DNA from: Fonticula alba ATCC 38817
Taxonomy: Eukaryota; Protista; Nucleariida
Strand: one strand, 5' to 3'
Assembly: GCA_000388065.2 (NCBI GenBank)
Contig: KB932235.1
DNA: 10,577 nt
Shown: in pieces, positions 249-10,577 of the stretch
Position numbering within the stretch: position 1 is the stretch's first letter
How the letters are laid out: every line of letters starts with the position of its first letter
Notes under the pieces: generated by a model
Seen by the model: only the letters and a program-made list of their open reading frames with translations
Database searches by the model: none
What the model was told of the DNA's origin: nothing
Position numbers and translations under genes: made by a program

Positions 249-3200
249 GGAACAGCCACTCCCCGGCAGGGAGTCCACCGCAGGGTCCGCCAGTGGCCCT
301 GCACCCTCGACCTCATGCAGAGACCGCCCTCGCAGGATGTCCCCTACCCGGCGGCTATCTTGGGCAAAAGCCAGCATGGGCACTGGCGGACCTTCGGTCG
401 GAGGCCTTCTCGCTGCCGAGGGCGGCCCCTCCAAGCCGTCCCAAGAGCAGGGGACGCGAAATGCCGGCCACCGCGAGGCGCTGTCGAGGCAGGACAGCAG
501 CTCGGCCACGGTCGGCCAATTGGGTGTCCCGCCGCCGGTGCCCGGCAGCCGGGGGCCCGGGGCCACGCGCCACGACACCGGAACCCGAGTCCCTGAGGAG
601 CCTGCCCTCGCCGGGGCCACCAGGGCCAGGATGTCTGGAAAGTCGGACAACATCAGTGCCAGAGCCCATGGCCGAGCAGCAGCCAAGTCCACCGGCGAGC
701 ATGTGCGAACCTGGGAGAGTGGCCACATCGAGGTGCGTCTTGGAGGTCCACCGAATACGAGTCACCAACACCGGCGGCGCGAGGAAAACCCCCGCCGGGA
801 CGCCCACAGACGGCAGGGCCCCATCGAGCGGGCGACCATCCGCCTCGGCGACGCGCCCGGCGCCAGCCGGATCCCGGAGAAGTCCGGCTCCTGGGCTGGA
901 CACCGTCAAGACAAGGGATCTGCTCGGGTTTGGCAAGCGGGTCAATTGCCGCGCCGGCTCCTGGCACCGGGCCTCCCACATGGGGCACATACCTTTCCGG
1001 GGGAATGCGCCAGCTGTGTGCCAGCGGTCCGTCGGTTGCCACATCAGGCCGGGCATCCTGCCCGGCAAGCTCCTGAACATTCGCCGCGAGAAGACGCCTG
1101 AGGACGGGTGTCAGGAAAAGGGAGCCAGCCAAAGGAAGAGGAGAACCCGCCCTCACCCTCGCCCAGTGCCCATGTGCTCGGTCTAAGACCAGCATACGGG
1201 CACTTGAACGTACGCCAGCGCCTCCCGATCGCCGTCCGTCAGGCCGGATTCCCGGTCCGTCACGCGAGCCACCGGCCGGACACTTGGGACACCATGGGGG
1301 AGGGGGGGGGGGCGGAGAGGAAGTCAGCAACCCAAGGCCGGGGTACCATGCACATGGCGCGCACATGCCCAATGCACAGCACGCAACGCACCGGCCGAGG
1401 GTGTCCCGGCAGCCAAGGTCAAACCACCCCAACAAAGGGGATCCCGATGCATCGGTGCCCCAGGGACCCCCACCAACCACCACAAGATCCACATCCTGGG
1501 CTGTCCACTCGATCGGCGGGGCGGCCAGCCGCACCGGGGCCAATGTGTCGACGGGCGCCGACGGCTCCTCCCGCGGGCGCTTCATGTCGCGACTCGATCG
1601 CGGCAGGATGGCGGAAGCCGGCCTCTTGGAAGAGGCGTCGCCCGATGTGGCCGACAACTCTCCCACCGAAGGCCCCTCGAGCAGCAGGTACTCCGGGCGG
1701 ATCTTCATCCAAGACCCGATGGACCGGCAGTTCGGCTCATACATCGAGTGTCCTGGTTTCAAGACGATGCCCTCATCGCTGGTTCATGAGCAGCCATGGC
1801 ATTCCGGGCATCAGGCAAATGGCGGACACATGGCATCGCCGCGAGGAGGAGAGGGGAATCGAAAAAAGCGTACCCCTCGGCCACGGCGCGATTCACACAC
1901 CGGGCGATGGCCTGCTCCACGGCCGGAAGTCCACCTGGCAGCGGCAGTACAAGGGTGTTCTGACGGTCGTCCGGCAACTCCAGCATCACTCGCCCGGGCA
2001 CCGGCGCAAGCACCCGTCGCAGATGTTCCCTTTCAGTGGCGGGGGTTAGAAAGGGGCATGGTCCAGCCGGAGTCGCGCGAATGTGGAGGCTTGTGCGCAC
2101 TTCCGCCGGTCAAGCGGCACCGATGCCATGGACCGACCATCCAAGTAGACGACATCGAAGACCACCATGCATGAGTGCGCATGCCCGGCGACTGACCGAT
2201 TGATTAGGCCCAGCATGGGGAGGGGGCGGGGGTCAACCAGAGGGAGCGGATGCCTTGCGTACCGCCAGACGACGCCGGTCGCACAAAGGAGAATGGCAAG
2301 ATCCGCCGGGCCACGGGACACCAAGCAATCAGTTCCCCATCGAGGATCACCTGCCGACCGAGGCGGCGAATGTCAGGAACCCAGGAGACAAGGCCCGCGC
2401 GCTGGCAGGACGAAAGCCGGTGGCATGCAGCCGGAAGGCACGCACATCGGTCACCGACCCGGCCAATGCGGCCGTCAAATGGTCGGCCAGCACCCTTCCG
2501 GCCAGGCGTGCTGTCCAGTCGACCCCGCGCCGGGACCAAAACCGCCAGCCGGCGCCGAGGCCCGAGCCCGTGCCCGGACGGGCAAAGTGCGCCTGGAGGC
2601 GCTCGCCGTCATACTTCCGCTCGACCAGCAGGCGGCCTTTCATGGACAGGAGAGCAGCGCGGAAGGATGCACCGGAGGCCGGCCGAGCTGACAGGTGGGG
2701 CCGGAAATACTGAAAGAGGGCCACCTCATCCGAAGGAACGGAGCGGGCACCGCGATAGAGATCGCCCGATGCCCTCGCATCGTCGGGCAGCCCGGCGACT
2801 TCCCGACCAAGGGCATCCACCAAGGCCAGGGCGAAGCCCGCTGCCTGGGGCACGTCTGTCAAGAGTGCACACTCAAGGGGGTTATTTGCTCATTCACGGG
2901 TGGGCATATGTGGGCGAGAGGGGGAGGGGGAGCCGGATGGAACACAGACGAGGGCGACCAGTCGCGTCGTTTGAGAGGGCCGATCTTTCCAGCCGGGCCA
3001 GAGGACGCACCACCCGCGAGCATCCGACCGAACCAAGTCACAGTTGTGTCATCCTCCGGGGGAATCGCCGCGCTTATAGCACGGAGCCGATCCAGGAGTA
3101 GCCGATACTCCGGGCTGGTGGAACGTGGACGGCCAAAGGGCATGTCAGACCCAGGCAGCAGGCCGCCTCAAGGAGGGGAAAGCACCCGCGGCAAGGGAAC

Positions 3201-3810
3201 GCACTCGGCACTGGCCTGGAGGAGTGTGGTGCAGCGCCCGCACACCCGGGTCAATCGGCCGAGAGCCTCGGCTGCTGCGTCGGCCAGTGACGGGAGCTCA
3301 TGGGCATGGTGAGGCTCGGCCTGGCGGAGAAAGGCCCGAGAGGCATGCTGACGAACGGGGTGCGGCCCTGTCGCCGGGTGGGTGGCCGCATGGCCGCGAT
3401 TGCCCAGCACCTGGGGGCATGGCTCCCCCGCCAAACAGACACCGGAGCAGGTTGCACGCGTGAGAAGGGGAAGGGGGACAGAGAGCAGGCCAGGGCGAGG
3501 AAGGAAGCAGGAAAGGGAAAGCACCCGGGCCAAGGGCCAACGCAAACACGCACGCCGCCGGTCATGAGGGTGAGGGTCAGGGAGAGGACATCCTGGTCCT
3601 GCTGCTCCTGCGGGGCGAGCAGACGTGGCCGTCAGCGGGGGAACCAGTCAATCGGGCACCGCAACCAGAGACAAACCTCGGTGCCTCAATGCACACTTCA
3701 CGCACACGAAGAAAGGAATGAAGAAGGCGACGCCGAGCGTGCCGCCATCTGGAGGCCCGCTCCAGCCAGCGACACACAGCCCCCAGCTGGCCAGACGCCT
3801 CAGTGTGCAT
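68..3810 (-). CDS. LIG4: DNA ligase IV (ATP-dependent NHEJ ligase), divergent; 3'-partial, continues past the left edge
   Basis: Frame-consistent exons (minus): 3810-3706, 3607-3554, 3410-3205, 3114-3011, 2855-2446, 2350-2263, 2191-2101, 2029-1874, 1778-1392, 1282-1214, 1097-993, 919-711, 634-68 (850 codons plus 1 nt). Nucleotidyltransferase motifs occur in order: I ERKYDGERLQAH (adenylated Lys at 2614-2616), Ia FWSRRG, III VILDGELIAW, IIIa CMVVFDVVYLDG, IV DEGIVLK, V WMKIRPEY. The (K/R)PEY ending resembles LIG4 rather than the KKDY of LIG1/LIG3. An OB-fold follows (DLVVVGG.WG, WRIPPERSLVLTV, VTRIRW), then a BRCT-like segment. ATG is in GCCATG context. The exon 3 acceptor and the true N-terminus are less certain. 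Confidence 0.9.
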
Positions 3811-4438
3811 GGCCGAAGAGGCGAAAGGGGGAGGGAGGGGGGGGAGGGGATCAGGCGGCGCCGGCAGGGGGAAAGGGGGCGTCCGGGCACGTGTCAGGCC
3901 GAGTGGGGGAGCAAGCCGAGCGAAGCTACTGAGGAGTACCGAGGAGCGTCGTGTCAAACAGGCCCATGCCGTCGGAGGCGAGGCCCTCCTCTTGGAGCGA
4001 TCGGGTCTACTCCTCCCCCCGAACCAGCCGGCCCCGGAAGGTGGGCCGACGGCAATTTTTTTCCTGCAACGCAGGGCGTCCTCGCCCGGAGCTTCTGGTC
4101 GATCACCAGCCAACGCAAGGGGCCGATCGCTTCTCCGGAGCGCGCGATCTCAAGCCGCGCCAGATTGCCAACGGACGTCCGTCCCCGTCCAGCGGCCGCC
4201 ACCCGAAGAGTGGCTGGCTGACCGAATGAGCTGGAGCAAGGAAAAAGAGACACTGTGTTGGGGCGCCCCCAGGCCAATCAGACATCTGCACCATCTTTCC
4301 TCCTCCCCCCACCGCCCTTGCCCTTGTGTCATCCTGCCCCCTCGTACGTGCGCGTCCTCCCCCCTCCCCCCCTCCCCTCCTCCCGTCCATCCTCCTGCTA
4401 CTCCTTTCAAAGGGATACCAGGTGCCCGCTCCCTCGCC
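3811..4438. promoter_or_regulatory. Divergent (head-to-head) intergenic region, likely shared promoter and 5' UTRs of LIG4 and membrin
   Basis: 628 bp lie between two outward-facing ATGs, both in GCCATG context and both preceded by pyrimidine-rich tracts on their sense strand. A CCAAT lies near 4274. No specific elements are established. Confidence 0.5.
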
Positions 4439-5882
4439 ATGGACCCGACGGAGTCCATGTTCAATAGCGCCCTCTCACTGGCCACCACGACCGGGGGGAT
4501 GCTCGACAGCATCGAAGGCCAGCTTAATTCCGGTTCGTGACCTCCCGCCCGGGAGGCGTCCGCTGCTCCCCTGCCATCCATCCTCGCTGGTCCCCCTCTG
4601 ACCCGCGTCACACCCAGGCGGGCCCGGCCTGCTAGACGGTTCGCTTGATCGATCGCTGGCGCGCGTGTCGCAGCAGTTGAGCGAGCTCCGGTCCATGCAC
4701 TACAATCTTCGCGACGCCGCCAAGCGGGAGATTCTCTCCGAACGGCGCGACCGCGCACAAAGGTGCGCCCCACCCCTCAAGCTGGGCCTTTGGCTTCATG
4801 TCATACGAGGCGCCTCCCCCCCCCCCACCTCCGTCTCGGATCTCTCCCGTGTCTGATCGCCTCTCTTCGTCTCCTCACCGGCGGGGGAAATGCCTGGCAG
4901 CCGCGCGCATTCCCTCAATGAGCAGCATACCGGTCTCCAGCGGCGCCTCGAAAAAGCGCAGCATGCCCTCGCACAGGTTCGCTCCCATCCTCCCCCCCCC
5001 CCCCCCTCTTCCCCCATGTGCCTGGGCACTTCTTCCCGGCCGTGACTCCCGGGAAGGCGCGTCACTGACATTGGCCACGCTGTTTCCCTCGCCATGCACC
5101 CAGACACCGGGCTCGCAGGCGTCACACTCTTCCAGTGCGACCATGCCCCTGGCTTCCACCGAGGACGCCACTGCCCTGCGGCAACGCCCGGCCCCCTCGT
5201 TGTTTGACAATCGCGCCAGCCAGTCGGCCCCTCAGAGCCTCTTCCCCCCTGCGGGCGGCTACCCGGGGGCCGGCCTGCCCAGTGGCCCAGGGTCCGGCTT
5301 CGCCCGGACGGGAGCCACCTCAAGCGGCGTACGTGGCTCTTCCTCCTCCTCCCCCTTCCTCCTCCCGCCGGCGCCCTGCACATGTGTCGCCATCCGTTCT
5401 TTCAACTGATCCCCACCTCGCCTCCCCCCTCTCCCACTTCAGTCACTCCTACCAACAAGCTTTGTGCCGCAGGATTTCGTCGATCGGACAGCTTCGCAAC
5501 TCGACGATTACATCGGTGCCGGGATGAACGCCCTGCGCAGTCTGTCGGACCAGCGGCAGCGCCTTGAGGTAATGCTCGCGCGACTCCTGGCATGATCCAC
5601 CCACCTTGGTCCTCCCCCTGCCTGACTCTCCACTGACCATGCCCCGCTCCTNNNNNNNNNNCCCCCCCCCCCCCCCCCCCCCCCCGCCCTGGGCGGCCTC
5701 CCCGCCGTGCGCACGCACAGGCGTCCCAAAATAAGCTGTTCACCACTTTGACGTCCATCGCTTCCGGGTCCGGGCTCATGCGAAACATCGAGTCGCAGAC
5801 AATCCGCTCGACGTGGATCATCCGCGGGGCGATCCTCCTGTCGATGACCATCGTCATCTCCGTGTGGTGGTTCTTCAAGTAG
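4439..5882 (+). CDS. GOSR2: Membrin / GS27 / Bos1-type Golgi Qb-SNARE, 265 aa
   Basis: Exons 4439-4532, 4618-4762, 4901-4976, 5104-5328, 5473-5568, 5721-5882 (798 nt, ends TAG). An N-terminal three-helix region (MDPTESMFNSALSL..., LARVSQQLSELRSMH..., RAHSLNEQHTGLQRRLEKAQ) precedes a SNARE motif QLDDYIGAGMNALRSLSDQRQRLEASQNKLFTTL...LMRNIE with zero-layer Q. This resembles membrin MDDLI..G..IL..LR.QR.TLKG.QKK.LD. A C-terminal tail anchor follows: WIIRGAILLSMTIVISVWWFFK*. Confidence 0.88.
5652..5661. other. Assembly gap (10 N) next to a C24 run in membrin intron 5
   Basis: Ns at 5652-5661 are followed by poly-C at 5662-5685. The flanking exons join in frame inside the SNARE motif (RLE|ASQ), so no coding sequence seems to be lost. 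Confidence 0.95.
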
Positions 5883-6244: not shown

Positions 6245-7517
6245 CTAGGCCCAAATCAGGAGAGCGGTTGCCGTGGCCATGGCGAGCCGCATGGCCGCGA
6301 GGAGGGTAACACCGGCCGGCAGCCACCCTGATGCTCCGTTGGGCCGCCTTTCCGGGAGAGCTTGGTCCTGGTCCGAGGCGTTGGTATCGCGTGGCTTGGT
6401 GCCCAATTTGGGGCCCCCTTCAGGCATGGGCCGGCCCGGGGGGTCGGTGCCCCGGTCGAGGTCGGTCTCCTCATAGGTGATATTGCCATCCTCATCCTGT
6501 TCCCCGATCGGCACCGGCTCCGGCCAGTCTGTGTCGAGGTGGGAGGGAGGCGAGGGGGGGGGGGGACGGGAATGTGCGTGTGAGACTTCTCCCCCCGGTA
6601 AAGTTGTCCTGACCCCACCCGAGCCGCCTGTCTCGGCCCCGTGGCCGGGGCAGCGGAGGAGGGCAATGGTCCCAGGCGCCGGACGCCGGACGCCGGACGC
6701 CGGACGCCGGACGTCGGCAGCCGCTTTGACACACGTACATGGGTTCCGGACGCCGATGACCCCCAGGTGGACGACCATCTCATGGTCTCGCATCGGTTGG
6801 TAGGGCCGCGGGCAGGGCACGATGACCGGGGGCTTGCGCTTGGGCAGGGCCCACTCCCACCGGGCATAGGGCGACTTCGGGGGGATGACCTGGCTTGGAT
6901 GGGTCTCATCTGCCTCGGCCAGGTTGATCCACGGGTCGGAGTAGCGATAGACCGTGGCCTCGCTGCCGGCTGGCCCGGCAGCGCCCTCATCCTCGGCCCC
7001 CTGGTAATCGTAGTCTTCGGCCTGCGACCGGTCCAGCAGGGGGTTCTCCCCTTCGTGGCTGTCGGAATGGGCGTCGGCCTGGGCCCAGCGCCGGGCCCGC
7101 TTGCCGGGGCCGCTGCCGGCAGGCCGCGTGCCAATCGCCCCGTAGTCGTAGCCGTCCTCCTCGCTGTCCTCCTCGTCGTCCTCAGGGAAATAGTACTCCT
7201 CATCGTAGTAATACTCCTCGTCGAAGTAGTAGTACCAATCCGGCGACAGGGGCTTCAAAGTCAAGCGCAGGCCGTATGCCCGCCCGAGGATCGACCGGTC
7301 GCCTCGGTCAAAAATGCTGGCCCAGGCCCATAACCAAGGGTCAGCGGGGGGCCGAAGGCCGGAGCCGGGCAAGGCGGGGCGTCAAAAGAAGTGTGTTCGT
7401 AGAACGCACGTAAGCCCACCGATGCCCGTCGTCTCCGGAGCACCAAGGGTCGTCGGGAGTGTGAGGTTGGCAGTGATGGTTCCCGTGGCAGATGACACCA
7501 TTCGTCCCTGTGTGTGT

Positions 7518-7563
<46 letters not shown>

Positions 7564-8139
7564 ATAGGGGGGGGGCGGGAAGGTGGGGGATGGCCGTAAA
7601 AAGAATGTCAGATGCTGGTTGTGGGTGCTGTCATGGTCGGCCGCCAGCCCACATGAATGTCCTGCCCCTGGGGACCTCTCTCCCCTCCCCCCGCCAGCCT
7701 GTGGGCATTGGTTCTTCCACATGCGCACCAAATCGCCAGGCTTTCGGATGAATGGGCCTACAAAGCGACAAATCTGCATCTCACGCTCTTCGTCGTCGTC
7801 CTCGCGATCTTCTTGATCCTCGCGATCTTCCCGGTCCTCGCGGTTCTCCTGGCGCCGTTGTCGGACCCCCGCAGCAGGGGCATGGATGGCCTCCCCCTCC
7901 TCGAAGGGAAAGGTGGTTGGCGACACCGGGGCATTCGGCAACAGCGAGGTCGACTCGCCGGAGTGAGACGACACCCCGGTGGGCTTGCGGGCCAGGGTCC
8001 CCTCCAAGGAAGCCGGCAGGAAGATGTCCCCGGCGAAGATGGCCCCGCCGCTGTAGATGTCGCCAAAGGTATGCACCGAGGCAGCGTACAGGTTCTTGGG
8101 CCGGAGGTTCCGGTGGTGCATGCGCACGCGAAGGAACTG

Positions 8140-8173
<34 letters not shown>

Positions 8174-9773
8174 TGCGCCCATCCAGACAGGCAGTCAGTC
8201 AGGCAGTCGAGCAGTCGCTGATCCACGCCCAGCCAGGCATCCCTGCATCCCTGCACCCAGCCATCCATCCAGAACCAGATGACCCGACTCCTTGGTCAGC
8301 TCAGCCCAGCCGGCGGCCAAGCTGGCAGGGCCCCGGCACGCCCGCGCACCTCCTCCCGGGCAGAGCCCTCGGGCGACACCTCGCTGCCGGGCAGTATGTC
8401 AAAGTAGGCGATGCCATTCGGGCTGGGCTCCTTGTCCAGGAAGAAACTTGGCCAGCGCTTTTCGTACTTGGGAGCGGGTTCGGTCCGGGGCTTCATGGAT
8501 TCGACCATGTGCGCGATCTTGGCGGTGTCCCACGACGTGACGGCCACCGCGTGCTGGACCTTGAATGGTGCTGTGGCAGGGGGCAGGCGTTGAGTGCATG
8601 TTAGCAGCCATCCTCGGTACCCTGCCGCCAGGCGGGTCCGGTGCCCGCGGGCAAGCGCTTGCGCAAGCTCCGAGGCCCGGGCCCGGGGGGCAAGGAGGGC
8701 GAGATAAAAGGGACGCGAAAAAAAGGAAAGCACGCACGCGGGTCTGCCACTTCCACCGTCCCGGGAACCGAATGGACGGTCGGGCTGTTCTCCAGGCCGA
8801 TGACCCCGGCCAGGGCAATGCGGCCGGGATGCGCGCGAGCCGGGCCGCGCTGGGGGACCCGCAGCCGCCCGGCATACGTGCGTGCTGCCTCTCGGGATGA
8901 CCTTGCCTCCTGCACGGTCATCTCCTCGAAGAAGGCCCGCTCCACCTCGGGGTCCGAGTAAGCCGGCGACTGGAGCTCCGCATATTCGGGCCAGCCGGCG
9001 GCAAGGGCGTCGGAGCCGTCGTCGTACGACGAGTCGGCCGCCGGGCCGAGCGGGTCATTCTCACGCCCCTGGCGTTCCCACCGGTCGCGGCCCAGCTGTG
9101 TCATGAAGTTCGGCCGGGTCGGGCAGTCGACCCGGCGGTCGTAAAGGACCACGCTCCGGCCGATGATGTAATTCGGGCTATTCGGGTCCAGACTACGAGA
9201 GGCCGGCGAGGCAGCATGGGCGACTTGTTGCGTTAGCGACTCAGTGTGCGGGTTTTTTTTTGACGAGATTCAAGCCTCCCCTCGGTCCTCGGACCGGGCC
9301 TCGCTCGCTCGCTCGCTCGATCAGGGCCTCGGGCGTGTACCTGGCTGTCCGGCTCTTGAGGACGGTCTTGGCTCGACCGGTGGAGTCAATGGTGATGTGG
9401 CCCTGAGGCGGCATGGGGCATGGAGACACAGCTGGCAAGTTAGATTCACCGAGTCCTTCGCCGCTCGATGGGGATGGCCCGGCAACCGACGCACAAAGTC
9501 CCCGACATGCTCCTCGAGTGTGCCATTGCACATGGCCAGCTCATTTTCCATGTTGTCTGGTCCCTGCAGCGGGATGGTCCGGAAGAAGGGCCCGACCGAC
9601 CGCGCGCGCGGGTTGGCCACATTCTCATCCCCGGTGAAGACCCCGCGCAGGTCGCCGTAGGTGTGCAGGTGCAGCGATAGCTCGGTCCCTGGCGAGGCGT
9701 CAGGGGACAGCAGCCGGGCGTGTGGGTGTCAGCGCCGAGCAGGCTGCCAATGCTCGTGGGAAACAGTGCGGCG

Positions 9774-9804
<31 letters not shown>

Positions 9805-10510
9805 AACACACAAGCCCCCCTGCTCTGCCAGCGGCGGGGGACGCGCACCAATCGGGAAGACCGTGATCCGAACATCGATCGCTGCGGCCACATGCTGCGC
9901 CGGGGCGAGCATGGATCCAAGGGAGGGTTAGTATCGCGGGGCCGAGCGGCAGGTCGCGAAGGGGCATCCGCACGTCGCCATTGTCCCAGAATTCGATCGT
10001 CCCATTGCAATGCGGGCAGGCCGATGTGCGTGTCAAGACCGCAAAGCCCGCGGGCTTGGTCGGGTCGACGAAGCGCTCCAGGGGGAAGTCCTTGTCCTCT
10101 TCTTCCTCTTCCTCGTCGTCCTCCTCCTCTTCTTCCTCGTCGTCGTCATCGTCACGGGCATGGCGCGCGTGGCTGGCCCAGCTTCTCTGCCGGTCCAGAT
10201 GGCGCGCGTGCAGCGCCAGCAATGCGAAGGGGACTGGCCTCGGGCGGGCATGGGGTCAGTGTCGCCGCTGGAGCGTGTGCCCGGGGTGCCGGTGTGTAGG
10301 GGCGGCGAGGCTGGAGTGCGTACGTGGCAGGCCGGATTCCGGCTTGGCGTCCTTCTCGGCATCGGCCAAAGCCAACTGAGTCAGCCTCGACTGGGGGATG
10401 CCATATTCGGTGGGCTCGTTCGAGGCCGCGTGGGCAATCGCCAAAAGGCATGCCGAAAGCAGCAGGCATAGGGCCGCGCCCAGGCGCCCTGCCGGCGAGG
10501 CCTGTGGCAT
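6245..10510 (-). CDS. Secreted, probably GPI-anchored protein with two tandem Cu/Zn-SOD-fold domains lacking canonical metal ligands, 930 aa
   Basis: Frame-consistent exons (minus): 10510-10324, 10233-9974, 9894-9849, 9688-9495, 9402-9341, 9192-8738, 8570-8350, 8136-7729, 7507-7410, 7316-6739, 6528-6245 (2793 nt). SOD1 landmarks occur twice in order. D1: FAVL, NGTIEF, LHLHTYGDL, SVGPFF, EEHVGDFGHITIDSTG, NYIIGRSVVLY, RIALAGVIG. D2: HAVAV, NGIAYF, ASVHTFGDI, FAGDIFLP, RKPGDLGRM, SILGRAYGLR, HLGVIG. Intron 2 has a TACTAAC branch site. There are five N-glycosylation sequons (NGT twice, NLT, NIT, NAS). Confidence 0.82.
6248..6340 (-). other. C-terminal GPI-anchor signal (or tail membrane anchor)
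   Basis: NGASGWLPAGVTLLAAMRLAMATATALLIWA* has small residues (candidate omega site N/G/S), a short spacer and a hydrophobic tail ending at the stop, with no cytosolic tail. Confidence 0.65.
6674..6715. repeat. Heptamer tandem repeat (GGACGCC)n in intron 10 of the SOD-like gene
   Basis: Four perfect units at 6681-6708 plus degenerate flanking units. Confidence 0.9.
7509..7562. repeat. (TG/CA)n microsatellite abutting the intron 8 acceptor of the SOD-like gene
   Basis: About 27 dinucleotide units with two interruptions; the sense strand reads ...ACACACACAG|GGA. Confidence 0.95.
8141..8172. repeat. (AGCC)8 microsatellite abutting the intron 7 acceptor of the SOD-like gene
   Basis: Eight perfect units; the sense strand reads (GGCT)n-GCAG|TTC. 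Confidence 0.95.
9301..9319. repeat. (TCGC)n short repeat in intron 5 of the SOD-like gene
   Basis: tcgctcgctcgctcgctcg. Confidence 0.85.
9775..9812. repeat. C17 run plus (CA)n tract in intron 3 of the SOD-like gene
   Basis: Read directly from the sequence. Confidence 0.9.
10427..10510 (-). other. Signal peptide of the SOD-like protein
   Basis: MPQASPAGRLGAALCLLLSACLLAIAHA has a basic n-region, a hydrophobic h-region and an A-H-A (A-X-A) cleavage site. Confidence 0.8.
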
Positions 10511-10577
10511 GTCACTGGCCAAGGGGTCGCGAGACACGCGGCGTCCTCCTCAAAGAGCCGTGGCAGCGGGGGGGGGG

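What the first reader, a model, noticed from the sequence alone, without database searches (positions are those of the whole stretch)
6245..10510. Cell-surface tandem SOD-fold protein with a dismantled active site in both domains (candidate SOD pseudoenzyme family)
Seen: the spliced product has a signal peptide, two complete SOD1-like beta-barrels and a GPI-type tail. By manual alignment to human SOD1, D1 keeps H46, H48, H80 and D83. It has H63->F (GPFF) and H120->Y (VVLY), and no His in the H71 region. D2 has H46->S, H63->I, H80->K and H120->R, keeping only H48 and D83. C57 and C146 are absent in both; R143 is shifted by one in D1 and absent in D2. Established: canonical Cu/Zn SODs need all four Cu histidines. 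Copper-only SODs (Candida Sod5, animal SOD-repeat proteins) keep those four and lose H71, H80 and loop VII. CCS domain II is a non-catalytic SOD fold but is intracellular. This protein fits none of these patterns. Inference: the SOD barrel has been repurposed as an extracellular scaffold, metal or redox sensor, or adhesion module. The gene is intact across 11 exons, arguing against a pseudogene.
Basis: partly seen in the sequence, partly recalled or inferred. Interest (0 to 1): 0.85.

Follow-up and report, generated by a model that had tools for sequence, protein, structure and literature searches.

The report
Surface protein from two dead SOD domains
A slime-mould-like relative of fungi (Fonticula alba) has a gene for a probably cell-surface protein made of two much-altered copies of the copper/zinc superoxide dismutase fold that both lack the full copper site, so it is most likely a non-enzyme; similar "dead" extracellular SOD relatives are already known in other organisms.

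Summary
On the minus strand, 10510-6245, 11 exons with uniform GT[AG]C donors give a 930-aa open frame. It is identical to the database protein H696_06238 of Fonticula alba. Domain 1 (aa ~122-392) is a firm Cu/Zn-SOD homolog by Pfam and by my own profile. It keeps H46, H48, H80 and D83, and has H63->F199 and H120->Y267. Domain 2 (aa ~403-840) is very diverged. Five weak lines agree that it is SOD-derived, and it shares intron positions and phases with domain 1, so it is an internal duplicate. It keeps only H48 and D83.

The signal peptide and GPI-type tail are plausible from sequence features only. No homolog of the whole protein or of either domain was found in five searches, so there is no "family". 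No transcript was seen: four RNA data sets hold the neighbouring SNARE gene but not this one.

The most likely reading is a non-catalytic, acidic, SOD-fold surface scaffold. The idea is not new: pernin, cavortin/dominin, the copper-less CSRP repeats, CCS domain II and YojM are precedents. I rate it a new variant of a known kind, of moderate interest. The scan had not noted this gene before.

The parts
6245..10510 (-). Whole coding gene H696_06238 (Fonticula alba): 11 exons, 10 introns of 79-221 nt, 930 codons plus stop
   Evidence: Model built. It is identical to P0001. The gene is called at the same place on scaffold KB932235.1.
10324..10510 (-). Exon 1: signal peptide (aa 1-28, 10510-10427) and the start of the mature N-terminal region
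   Evidence: An in-frame stop lies 13 codons upstream of the ATG. The hydrophobic core aa 10-26 has Kyte-Doolittle mean 2.58, and the cleavage motif is AHA|A.
9974..10233 (-). Exon 2: two HARH motifs, a 23-residue Asp/Glu-rich stretch (22 acidic), then D1 strands 1-2 including the CPHC hairpin (10018-10007)
   Evidence: Translation. Composition is 32% D+E for aa 29-121.
9849..9894 (-). Exon 3: D1 strand 3 (HVAAAIDVRITVFPI)
   Evidence: Aligned to the SodC profile. A TACTAAC branch-site-like motif lies upstream of the acceptor.
9495..9688 (-). Exon 4: D1 metal-site core with H171 and H173 (= H46, H48), F199 (= H63), H225 (= H80) and D228 (= D83)
   Evidence: Pfam Sod_Cu covers aa 139-273.
9341..9402 (-). 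Exon 5: D1 strands 5-6 (GHITIDSTGRAKTVLKSRTA)
8738..9192 (-). Exon 6: D1 strand 7 with Y267 (= H120), an ~85-aa insert in loop VII (9101-8847), R374, strand 8 (GRIALAGVIG) and the linker
   Evidence: The insert shows coding-type GC periodicity of 0.75/0.55/0.84.
8350..8570 (-). Exon 7: start of D2 (aa 402-475)
   Evidence: AF2 (alignment-guided) puts a strand at aa 453-460. The assignment of strand 1 is uncertain.
7729..8136 (-). Exon 8: D2 strands 3-4 with S495 and H497 (= H46, H48), an acidic ~82-aa loop IV insert (8013-7768), C598, VGPFI, K607 (= H80) and D610 (= D83)
   Evidence: Pfam sub-threshold hit on aa 475-522. hhalign, MAFFT and the D1-D2 alignment.
7410..7507 (-). Exon 9: D2 strands 5-6 (GRMVSSATGTITANLTL...)
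   Evidence: hmmsearch with the SodC profile aligns aa 607-631 to profile positions 126-150. AF2 pLDDT is 91-92 here.
6739..7316 (-). Exon 10: D2 strand 7 with R661 (= H120), a 146-aa Tyr/Asp/Glu/Pro-rich loop VII insert (7243-6806), C812 and strand 8 (EMVVHLGVIG)
   Evidence: The insert GC periodicity is 0.69/0.48/0.86.
6245..6528 (-). Exon 11: Pro/acidic stalk with NIT and NAS sequons (6517-6341), GPI-type signal (aa 900-930, 6340-6248) and the stop codon
   Evidence: Small residues N900-G-A, a spacer, then a hydrophobic end LPAGVTLLAAMRLAMATATALLIWA with Kyte-Doolittle mean 1.61. No predictor was run.

Best explanation
H696_06238 encodes a secreted, probably GPI-anchored, strongly acidic (pI ~4.7) glycoprotein. 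It is built from two tandem beta-barrels derived from Cu/Zn superoxide dismutase.

The two barrels arose by duplication of a block of exons. The copy-number event came after the bridging histidine was probably already lost, since both copies read RxVGPF[FI]R where SODs read AGPHFNP.

Neither barrel can form the canonical copper site. D1 has 2 of 4 copper histidines and D2 has 1 of 4. The zinc site is half gone in D1 and nearly gone in D2. The C57-C146 disulfide is absent. The protein is therefore not a conventional superoxide dismutase.

Most likely the barrels act as rigid, Ig-like spacers on the cell surface. The positions that form the zinc loop and the electrostatic loop in SODs carry 82-146-residue acidic, Tyr- and Pro-rich inserts. 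An N-terminal HARH/HARH plus Asp/Glu-rich segment is also exposed. I infer that these parts bind cations, metals or matrix partners, as the inactive bivalve SOD homologs pernin and cavortin bind metals.

Shown: the gene structure, the SOD ancestry of D1, the duplication signature and the ligand substitutions. Inferred: surface location, lack of activity, and the binding or scaffold role.
For: - Gene model identical to the database protein.
- D1 is Sod_Cu: Pfam E 2e-10, hhalign probability 97% and P 2e-10, ESMFold model TM 0.74 to a SOD cluster.
- D2 is SOD-derived: Pfam E 0.008 at the expected profile positions; hhalign score 27.4 with 0 of 150 shuffles reaching it; D1 core against D2 core reached by 2 of 1000 shuffles; ESMFold TM 0.68 over 153 residues; all 100 nearest Atlas clusters are Sod_Cu; an alignment-guided AF2 model has all of its top 50 PDB matches in Cu/Zn SODs or close SOD-fold homologs, TM 0.51-0.65 by target.
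- Intron positions: both domains have a phase-0 intron right after GD[FL] and before G, and a phase-2 intron in the codon 11 residues before the GR of strand 7. A third phase-0 intron before strand 3 matches within 0-2 residues.
- Ligand mapping.
- Coding-type GC1/2/3 of 0.68/0.49/0.81 in every part, inserts included, against flat introns at 0.69/0.67/0.67.
- Precedents for inactive, metal-binding extracellular SOD homologs (PMC6530089, PMC9118643) and for copper-less repeats in surface CSRPs (PMC13017621).
Against: - No transcript evidence. Eight RNA runs with the species label gave no real reads on the gene. Four of them also gave none on the neighbouring SNARE gene, so those runs lack the organism.
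- Four small 2012 RNA data sets hold 36-47% of the neighbour's words, but none held 5% of this gene's words.
- No ortholog was found anywhere, so purifying selection cannot be measured.
- No atomic model could be inspected, so other residues (Y267, H231, H371, C218) could complete a different metal site in D1.
- The signal peptide and GPI signal were not run through predictors.
- The AF2 support for D2 depends on a SodC alignment. AF2 without an alignment failed (pLDDT 34).
Confidence: 0.6

Rival explanations
1. D1 keeps a remodelled metal site. H171 and H173 would combine with Y267 and/or nearby H231, H371, C218 or the Zn-site remnants H225 and D228. The protein would then be a surface copper/zinc binder, sensor, chaperone or a different redox enzyme rather than an inert scaffold. 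The HARH motifs would feed metal to the site, as the His-rich N-terminal extensions of some bacterial SodC proteins do (that comparison is from memory).
For: - Four of the seven canonical ligand residues survive in D1.
- R374 at the channel arginine position is kept.
- There is a His-rich, acidic N-terminus and a CPHC motif.
- Inactive pernin and cavortin do bind several metals (PMC6530089).
Against: - The bridging His63 and His120 are replaced by Phe and Tyr.
- One missing Cu histidine is enough to abolish Cu binding in human CCS domain II (PMC13017621). YojM, whose copper site is disrupted, binds no Cu (PMC10432803).
- No 3D coordinates were available to test the geometry.
Confidence: 0.15
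2. The gene is silent or decaying. It would be a lineage-specific duplicate drifting under relaxed constraint, kept open only because GC-rich DNA has few stop codons. The annotated protein would then not be made in meaningful amounts.
For: - It is an orphan with no homolog.
- No RNA data set holds it, while four hold its neighbour.
- D2 is degraded to near-random similarity, and about 40% of the protein is low-complexity insert.
- Long chance ORFs exist on all frames of this window.
Against: - All 10 introns keep consensus donors and acceptors, and the frame is kept across 11 exons.
- About 22 stops would be expected in 930 random codons at this base composition (my estimate).
- A strong GC3>GC1>GC2 pattern is present in every segment, while the introns are flat.
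- The signal peptide and C-terminal anchor signal are both intact.
- The RNA sets are small and come from unknown life stages.
Confidence: 0.17
3. D2 is not SOD-derived. It would be another beta-sandwich or a largely disordered region that resembles SOD only through a few short motifs. The protein would then be a single-SOD-domain protein with a long tail.
For: - D2 is below the Pfam threshold.
- It has no PDB sequence hit.
- hhalign probability is only 22%.
- AF2 without an alignment failed.
- Atlas feature scores of 0.85 are 'lead only'.
Against: - Collinear matches of five motifs.
- The shuffle tests.
- The alignment-free ESMFold match at TM 0.68.
- Above all, two intron positions and phases identical to D1.
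Confidence: 0.06

Closest known systems
Pernin, cavortin (Cg-EcSOD) and dominin of bivalves
   Same: They are secreted Cu/Zn-SOD homologs without SOD activity. Pernin has three tandem CuZn-SOD domains and binds several metals. They have been proposed to act in metal handling, binding and matrix formation (PMC6530089, PMC9118643).
   Different: They are animal plasma proteins, soluble and particle-forming, and not GPI-anchored. They lack giant loop inserts. No sequence relationship beyond the SOD fold was found here. Origin is most likely independent.
[quoted passage not shown]
   Same: Both are opisthokont proteins with a signal peptide, tandem SOD-fold repeats and a GPI or secretion signal. 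[quoted passage not shown]
   Different: CSRPs have 4-12 repeats, linkers of 5-9 residues, a conserved disulfide, a short loop VII and the E110/D113 signature, and their C-terminal repeats have intact Cu sites. Here there are 2 repeats, none Cu-competent, no canonical disulfide and a greatly expanded loop VII. D1 keeps His at the E110 position.
Fungal Cu-only SODs (Candida SOD5 type)
   Same: Both are extracellular, GPI-anchored SOD-fold proteins of the fungal side of the opisthokonts. The Asp equivalent to D83/D113 is kept (PMC13017621).
   Different: SOD5-type enzymes keep all four Cu histidines and the disulfide, and have a shortened electrostatic loop. This protein meets none of these.
CCS domain II
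   Same: It is a SOD fold that lost Cu binding through loss of a Cu histidine and is used for protein contacts (PMC13017621).
   Different: CCS is intracellular, is flanked by an ATX1-like domain and a CxC domain, and in human CCS keeps the Zn site and the disulfide. None of these features is present here (Pfam).
Bacillus subtilis YojM
   Same: It is a CuZnSOD-like protein whose copper site is disrupted, so it binds no copper and has no activity (PMC10432803, citing Banci 2005).
   Different: It is bacterial, has a single domain and has no large inserts.
Canonical Cu/Zn SOD (SOD1/SodC, Pfam PF00080)
   Same: D1 passes the Pfam gathering score. It keeps H46, H48, H80, D83 and the arginine, and it has a full-length zinc loop and loop VII.
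   Different: H63 and H120 are lost, H71 is lost, there is no C57-C146 disulfide, and loop VII carries an 85-aa insert. D2 is far more degenerate.

Membership tests
Pfam Sod_Cu (PF00080) domain family | Profile match above the gathering score (28.9 bits) | tested here: met
   The whole protein scores 54 bits and D1 alone 41.6-43.5 bits. D2 alone scores 17 bits, below the cut-off.
Pfam Sod_Cu (PF00080) domain family | Greek-key beta-barrel fold in each domain | tested here: inconclusive
   ESMFold model parts match SOD clusters at TM 0.74 (D1) and 0.68 (D2), but the model's mean pLDDT is 0.48. AF2 for D2 gives SOD matches only with a SodC alignment and fails without one.
Active Cu/Zn SOD | Four Cu histidines (H46, H48, H63, H120) | tested here: not met
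   D1: H171 and H173 kept, F199 and Y267 substituted. D2: only H497 kept, with S495, F604 or I513, and R661.
Active Cu/Zn SOD | Zn ligands H63, H71, H80 and D83 | tested here: not met
   D1 keeps H225 and D228 only. D2 keeps D610 only.
Active Cu/Zn SOD | C57-C146 disulfide | tested here: not met
   The C146 position is A378 in D1 and L828 in D2. C598 may sit at the C57 position, but its canonical partner is missing.
Fungal Cu-only SOD | Intact Cu site together with a shortened loop VII and the E110/D113 pair | tested here: not met
   The Cu site is incomplete. Loop VII carries inserts of 85 and 146 aa. The E110 position is H225 in D1 and K607 in D2, while the Asp is kept. Features are as defined in PMC13017621.
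Fungal Cu-only SOD | Signal peptide and GPI anchor | tested here: inconclusive
   Sequence features fit. No SignalP or GPI predictor was available, and there is no experiment.
CSRP | 4-12 tandem Cu-only SOD repeats with 5-9 residue linkers, a conserved disulfide and Cu-competent C-terminal repeats | tested here: not met
   There are two repeats and a linker of about 10-25 residues. There is no canonical disulfide and no Cu-competent repeat.
CCS | ATX1/HMA domain I and a CxC domain III flanking the SOD-like domain; cytosolic location | tested here: not met
   There is no HMA hit in Pfam, and an N-terminal signal peptide is present.
Inactive extracellular SOD homologs (pernin/cavortin type) | Lack of SOD activity and binding of several metals, shown biochemically | not testable with these tools
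   This needs recombinant protein. Only the ligand losses are shown here.

The most novel reading that the evidence does not exclude
D1 carries a new kind of mononuclear metal site built on the SOD barrel: two surviving histidines, a tyrosine at the H120 position, and a histidine recruited from the electrostatic-loop rim or the Zn-site remnants. The protein would then be a cell-surface copper sensor or a non-SOD redox catalyst in the closest amoeboid relative of fungi. D2 and the acidic loops would serve as metal-gathering antennae.
Probability: 0.1. Interest if true: 0.7.

Novelty: new variant of a known kind. Interest (0 to 1): 0.36.

Why it matters
Cu/Zn SOD is a textbook enzyme whose fold has been re-used several times: in CCS, in Cu-only SODs, in CSRPs and in bivalve plasma proteins. 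Fonticula branches at the base of the fungal side of the opisthokonts, the group in which extracellular GPI-anchored SOD derivatives are thought to have arisen. Its two-domain, fully copper-less, GPI-type SOD-fold protein is one more, probably independent, case of this fold becoming a surface scaffold. It could inform how Cu-only SODs and CSRPs began.

The value is limited. The protein is a single-species orphan, it is not shown to be expressed, and non-catalytic extracellular SOD homologs are already documented.

Tried and rejected
- Exon-by-exon Pfam and PDB searches found no SOD. The pieces were too short; the spliced protein does hit.
- RNA evidence. Two read-laying runs on eight runs with the species label gave only poly-G/C artefacts, also on the neighbouring V-SNARE gene. 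Those runs do not contain this organism and test nothing.
- Homolog hunts:
  - The representative library with the C-terminal ORF gave itself plus one low-complexity hit.
  - The full-length search was swamped by acidic words and found only itself.
  - D1 as a stand-alone query gave none at E<=10.
  - The D1 region against long proteins gave only itself.
  - The metagenome scan gave two loci. One is a chance DPNSPNYI match inside a phage tail-sheath-like ORF and one is a 16-residue match.
- AF2 of D2 without an alignment gave pLDDT 34 and was useless.
- D1 against D2 over the full domains was not above shuffles (47 against 39.7 +/- 6.2).
- Apparent similarity of the two loop VII inserts (RW..., YSDP...) was not significant (98 of 1000 shuffles), so shared ancestry of the inserts is not claimed.
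- The inserts as unrecognised introns: rejected. They have coding-type GC periodicity, they almost lack donor-like motifs, and the real introns are flat.
- A bacterial SodC HMM alone does not detect D2 convincingly (2.6-6 bits).

Full report
**What is there.** The window is GC-rich eukaryotic DNA (62-70% GC). Translating the minus strand between 10510 and 6245 in three frames shows stop-free pieces that carry Cu/Zn-SOD-like motifs in the canonical order. I joined them at GT...AG sites. All ten donors read GT[AG]C (mostly GTGCGY). All acceptors are CAG or TAG. Introns are 79-221 nt long. The result is an 11-exon, 2793-nt open frame of 930 codons. An in-frame stop lies 13 codons upstream of the ATG.

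A HMMER search of 1.84 billion representative proteins with the last long ORF returned a 930-aa protein, P0001. It is identical to my model. One source names it hypothetical protein H696_06238 of Fonticula alba, and UniRef names it a 'Superoxide dismutase copper/zinc binding domain-containing protein'. The gene lies 67 bp from the end of the 31.4-kb scaffold KB932235.1. Its neighbours are a V-SNARE_C gene and a DNA-ligase gene.

**Is it coding?** GC at codon positions 1/2/3 is 0.68/0.49/0.81 overall. The same pattern holds in every part, including the three long inserts (GC3 0.80-0.86, GC2 about 0.5). The ten introns are flat at 0.69/0.67/0.67. The inserts are therefore coding-like and are not overlooked introns.

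**Domain 1 (aa ~122-392).**
- Pfam Sod_Cu scores 54 bits (E 3e-14) on the whole protein and 41.6-43.5 bits on D1 alone. The cut-off is 28.9 bits.
- phmmer finds PDB SOD1s, best E 9e-6.
- I fetched bacterial sodC loci by a degenerate HGFHIHE pattern and built a profile from the 102 SodC proteins kept. hhalign of that profile to D1 gives probability 97% and P 2e-10.
- The ESM Atlas model of this part matches a SOD cluster at TM 0.74 by target.

Three alignments agree on the residues:

| SOD1 position | D1 residue |
|---|---|
| H46 | H171 |
| H48 | H173 |
| H63 | F199 |
| H71 | no His in that region |
| H80 | H225 |
| D83 | D228 |
| H120 | Y267 |
| R143 | R374 (one-residue register shift) |
| C146 | A378 |

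Loop VII carries an insert of about 85 aa.

**Domain 2 (aa ~403-840).** D2 is very diverged. Pfam gives 17 bits (E 0.008), at the expected profile positions 16-57. There is no PDB sequence hit. Several independent weak lines nevertheless agree:
- hhalign of the loop-trimmed core to the SodC profile gives a collinear 109-column alignment with score 27.4 (P 1e-3). None of 150 shuffles reaches it (mean 11.8, maximum 21.5). The untrimmed domain scores 28.6.
- D1 core against D2 core scores 54 against 30.8 +/- 4.9, reached by 2 of 1000 shuffles. The two share HT[YF]GD, RxVGPF[FI]R, I[IL]GR and GVIG.
- All 100 nearest Atlas clusters by language-model features are Sod_Cu. The alignment-free ESMFold model of 402-840 matches a SOD cluster at TM 0.68 over 153 residues.
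- AF2 with a SodC-containing alignment gives core strands at pLDDT 70-93, and all of its top 50 PDB matches are Cu/Zn SODs or close SOD-fold homologs. This line is partly circular.
- Gene structure, the strongest line. Both domains have a phase-0 intron exactly between GD[FL] and G (F229|G230 and L611|G612). Both have a phase-2 intron in the codon that lies 11 residues before the GR of strand 7 (S250 and T644). MAFFT puts that codon pair in the same alignment column. A third phase-0 intron before strand 3 coincides within 0-2 residues.

D2 is therefore an internal duplicate of a D1-like exon block. Its residues are:

| SOD1 position | D2 residue |
|---|---|
| H46 | S495 |
| H48 | H497 |
| H80 | K607 |
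| D83 | D610 |
| H120 | R661 |
| R143 | V825 |
| C146 | L828 |

Loop IV carries an acidic insert of about 82 aa, and loop VII carries a 146-aa Tyr/Asp/Glu/Pro-rich insert.

**Ends of the protein.** The N-terminus has a basic residue, a hydrophobic core (aa 10-26, KD 2.58) and AHA|A. The C-terminus has small residues N900-G-A, a short spacer and a hydrophobic end of 21-25 residues. It is preceded by a 59-aa Pro/acidic stalk with two N-glycosylation sequons. This fits a signal peptide plus GPI signal, but no predictor was available. The mature protein has pI ~4.7. Its N-terminal segment has two HARH motifs and a 23-residue Asp/Glu-rich stretch (22 acidic).

**Expression.** Eight RNA runs that carry the species label gave no genuine reads on the gene. 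Four of them also gave none on the adjacent V-SNARE gene, so they do not contain this organism and are no test. As a control, I searched the index with the V-SNARE gene. Four small 2012 RNA(?) data sets hold 36-47% of its words. The earlier search with the SOD-like gene stated that no served RNA run holds even a twentieth of its words. No transcript is documented, which is weak negative evidence.

**Relatives.** Four protein searches returned only the protein itself (one search added one low-complexity hit). The metagenome-contig scan returned only chance hits. There is no detectable family, so selection cannot be measured.

**Mechanism.** With 2 of 4 (D1) and 1 of 4 (D2) copper histidines, half or less of the zinc site and no canonical disulfide, conventional SOD chemistry is very unlikely. 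Loss of a single Cu histidine abolishes Cu binding in human CCS domain II (PMC13017621). YojM, whose copper site is disrupted, binds no Cu (PMC10432803).

I therefore read the protein as a non-catalytic surface scaffold. Its SOD barrels display long acidic loops and a His/acidic N-terminus, plausibly for cation, metal or matrix binding. This is by analogy with pernin and cavortin/dominin, which lack SOD activity and bind metals (PMC6530089, PMC9118643). It is an inference, held at about 0.6.

The rivals are:
- a remodelled metal site in D1 (0.15);
- a silent or decaying orphan gene (0.17);
- D2 not being SOD-derived (0.06).

**Comparison and novelty.** For those three that is right. It fails the defining features of each (see the membership table).

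The literature, however, already holds extracellular, catalytically dead SOD homologs. One is a three-domain protein (pernin). [quoted passage not shown]

What is particular here:
- the lineage, which is the deepest holomycotan branch;
- that no domain is copper-competent;
- that D1 keeps Zn-site remnants while D2 has its zinc sub-loop cut to three residues;
- that both SOD functional loops have become giant low-complexity inserts;
- the GPI-type anchor.

I class it as a new variant of a known kind, of moderate interest. An earlier scan note guessed a holomycotan genome (s1-066025), and the database name agrees. The scan had not reported this gene before.

Noticed in passing
window 10018-10007 (minus strand), aa 135-138: D1 has a Cys-Pro-His-Cys motif in the strand 1-2 hairpin. 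From memory, this is the same tetrapeptide as the DsbA active site. It could be a redox or metal CxxC, or just a local disulfide. The mature protein has six Cys in all (135, 138, 218, 273, 598, 812). C218/C273 and C598/C812 each pair a loop IV Cys with a loop VII 'CP(x)RP' Cys, so they may be replacement disulfides.
   Followed up: no
window ~10300-10090 (minus strand), aa 70-109: The N-terminal segment LHARHLDRQRSWASHARHAR is followed by a 23-residue Asp/Glu-rich stretch (22 acidic). It is a possible metal-capturing extension.
   Followed up: no
window 7243-7150 (minus strand), aa 669-700: The stretch DWYYYFDEEYYYDEEYYFPEDDEEDSEEDGYDYG is a dense Tyr/acidic run inside D2 loop VII. From memory, it is reminiscent of tyrosine-sulfation or cation-binding sequences.
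   Followed up: no
window 9765-9820, 8134-8212, 7501-7568, 6650-6720: Microsatellites and homopolymers lie inside introns 3, 7, 8 and 10: (GT/CA)n, (CAGC)n, poly-G/C and (CGGACG)n.
   Followed up: no
window ~4400-5880 (+ strand): The neighbouring gene is a tail-anchored SNARE (V-SNARE_C, weak Pfam hit). Its annotated product of 275 aa has no Pfam hit on record. A run of 10 N sits inside it near 5650.
   Followed up: partly
window 650-3810 (minus strand): The ATP-dependent DNA ligase gene is annotated as only 341 aa (window ~2204-3810). ORF pieces further downstream (656-1783, with ...DEGIVLK...WMKIRPEY...) look to me like later ligase motifs but gave no Pfam hit. The annotated model may be truncated.
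   Followed up: partly
window 10511-10577: The gene starts 67 bp from the scaffold end, which ends in poly-G. The promoter and 5' UTR are therefore not in the assembly.
   Followed up: no
runs X1-X21: The 21 RNA runs offered under the 'same species label' (organism A) appear not to contain this organism. There were zero genuine reads on either the SOD-like gene or the housekeeping SNARE gene. The runs that do hold the neighbour are labelled as another organism (D).
   Followed up: partly
window 9935-9925 (minus strand), intron 2: A perfect TACTAAC branch-site-like motif lies about 30 nt upstream of the first AG, which is the acceptor. This is in line with an earlier scan note on first-AG selection in this genome.
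   Followed up: no
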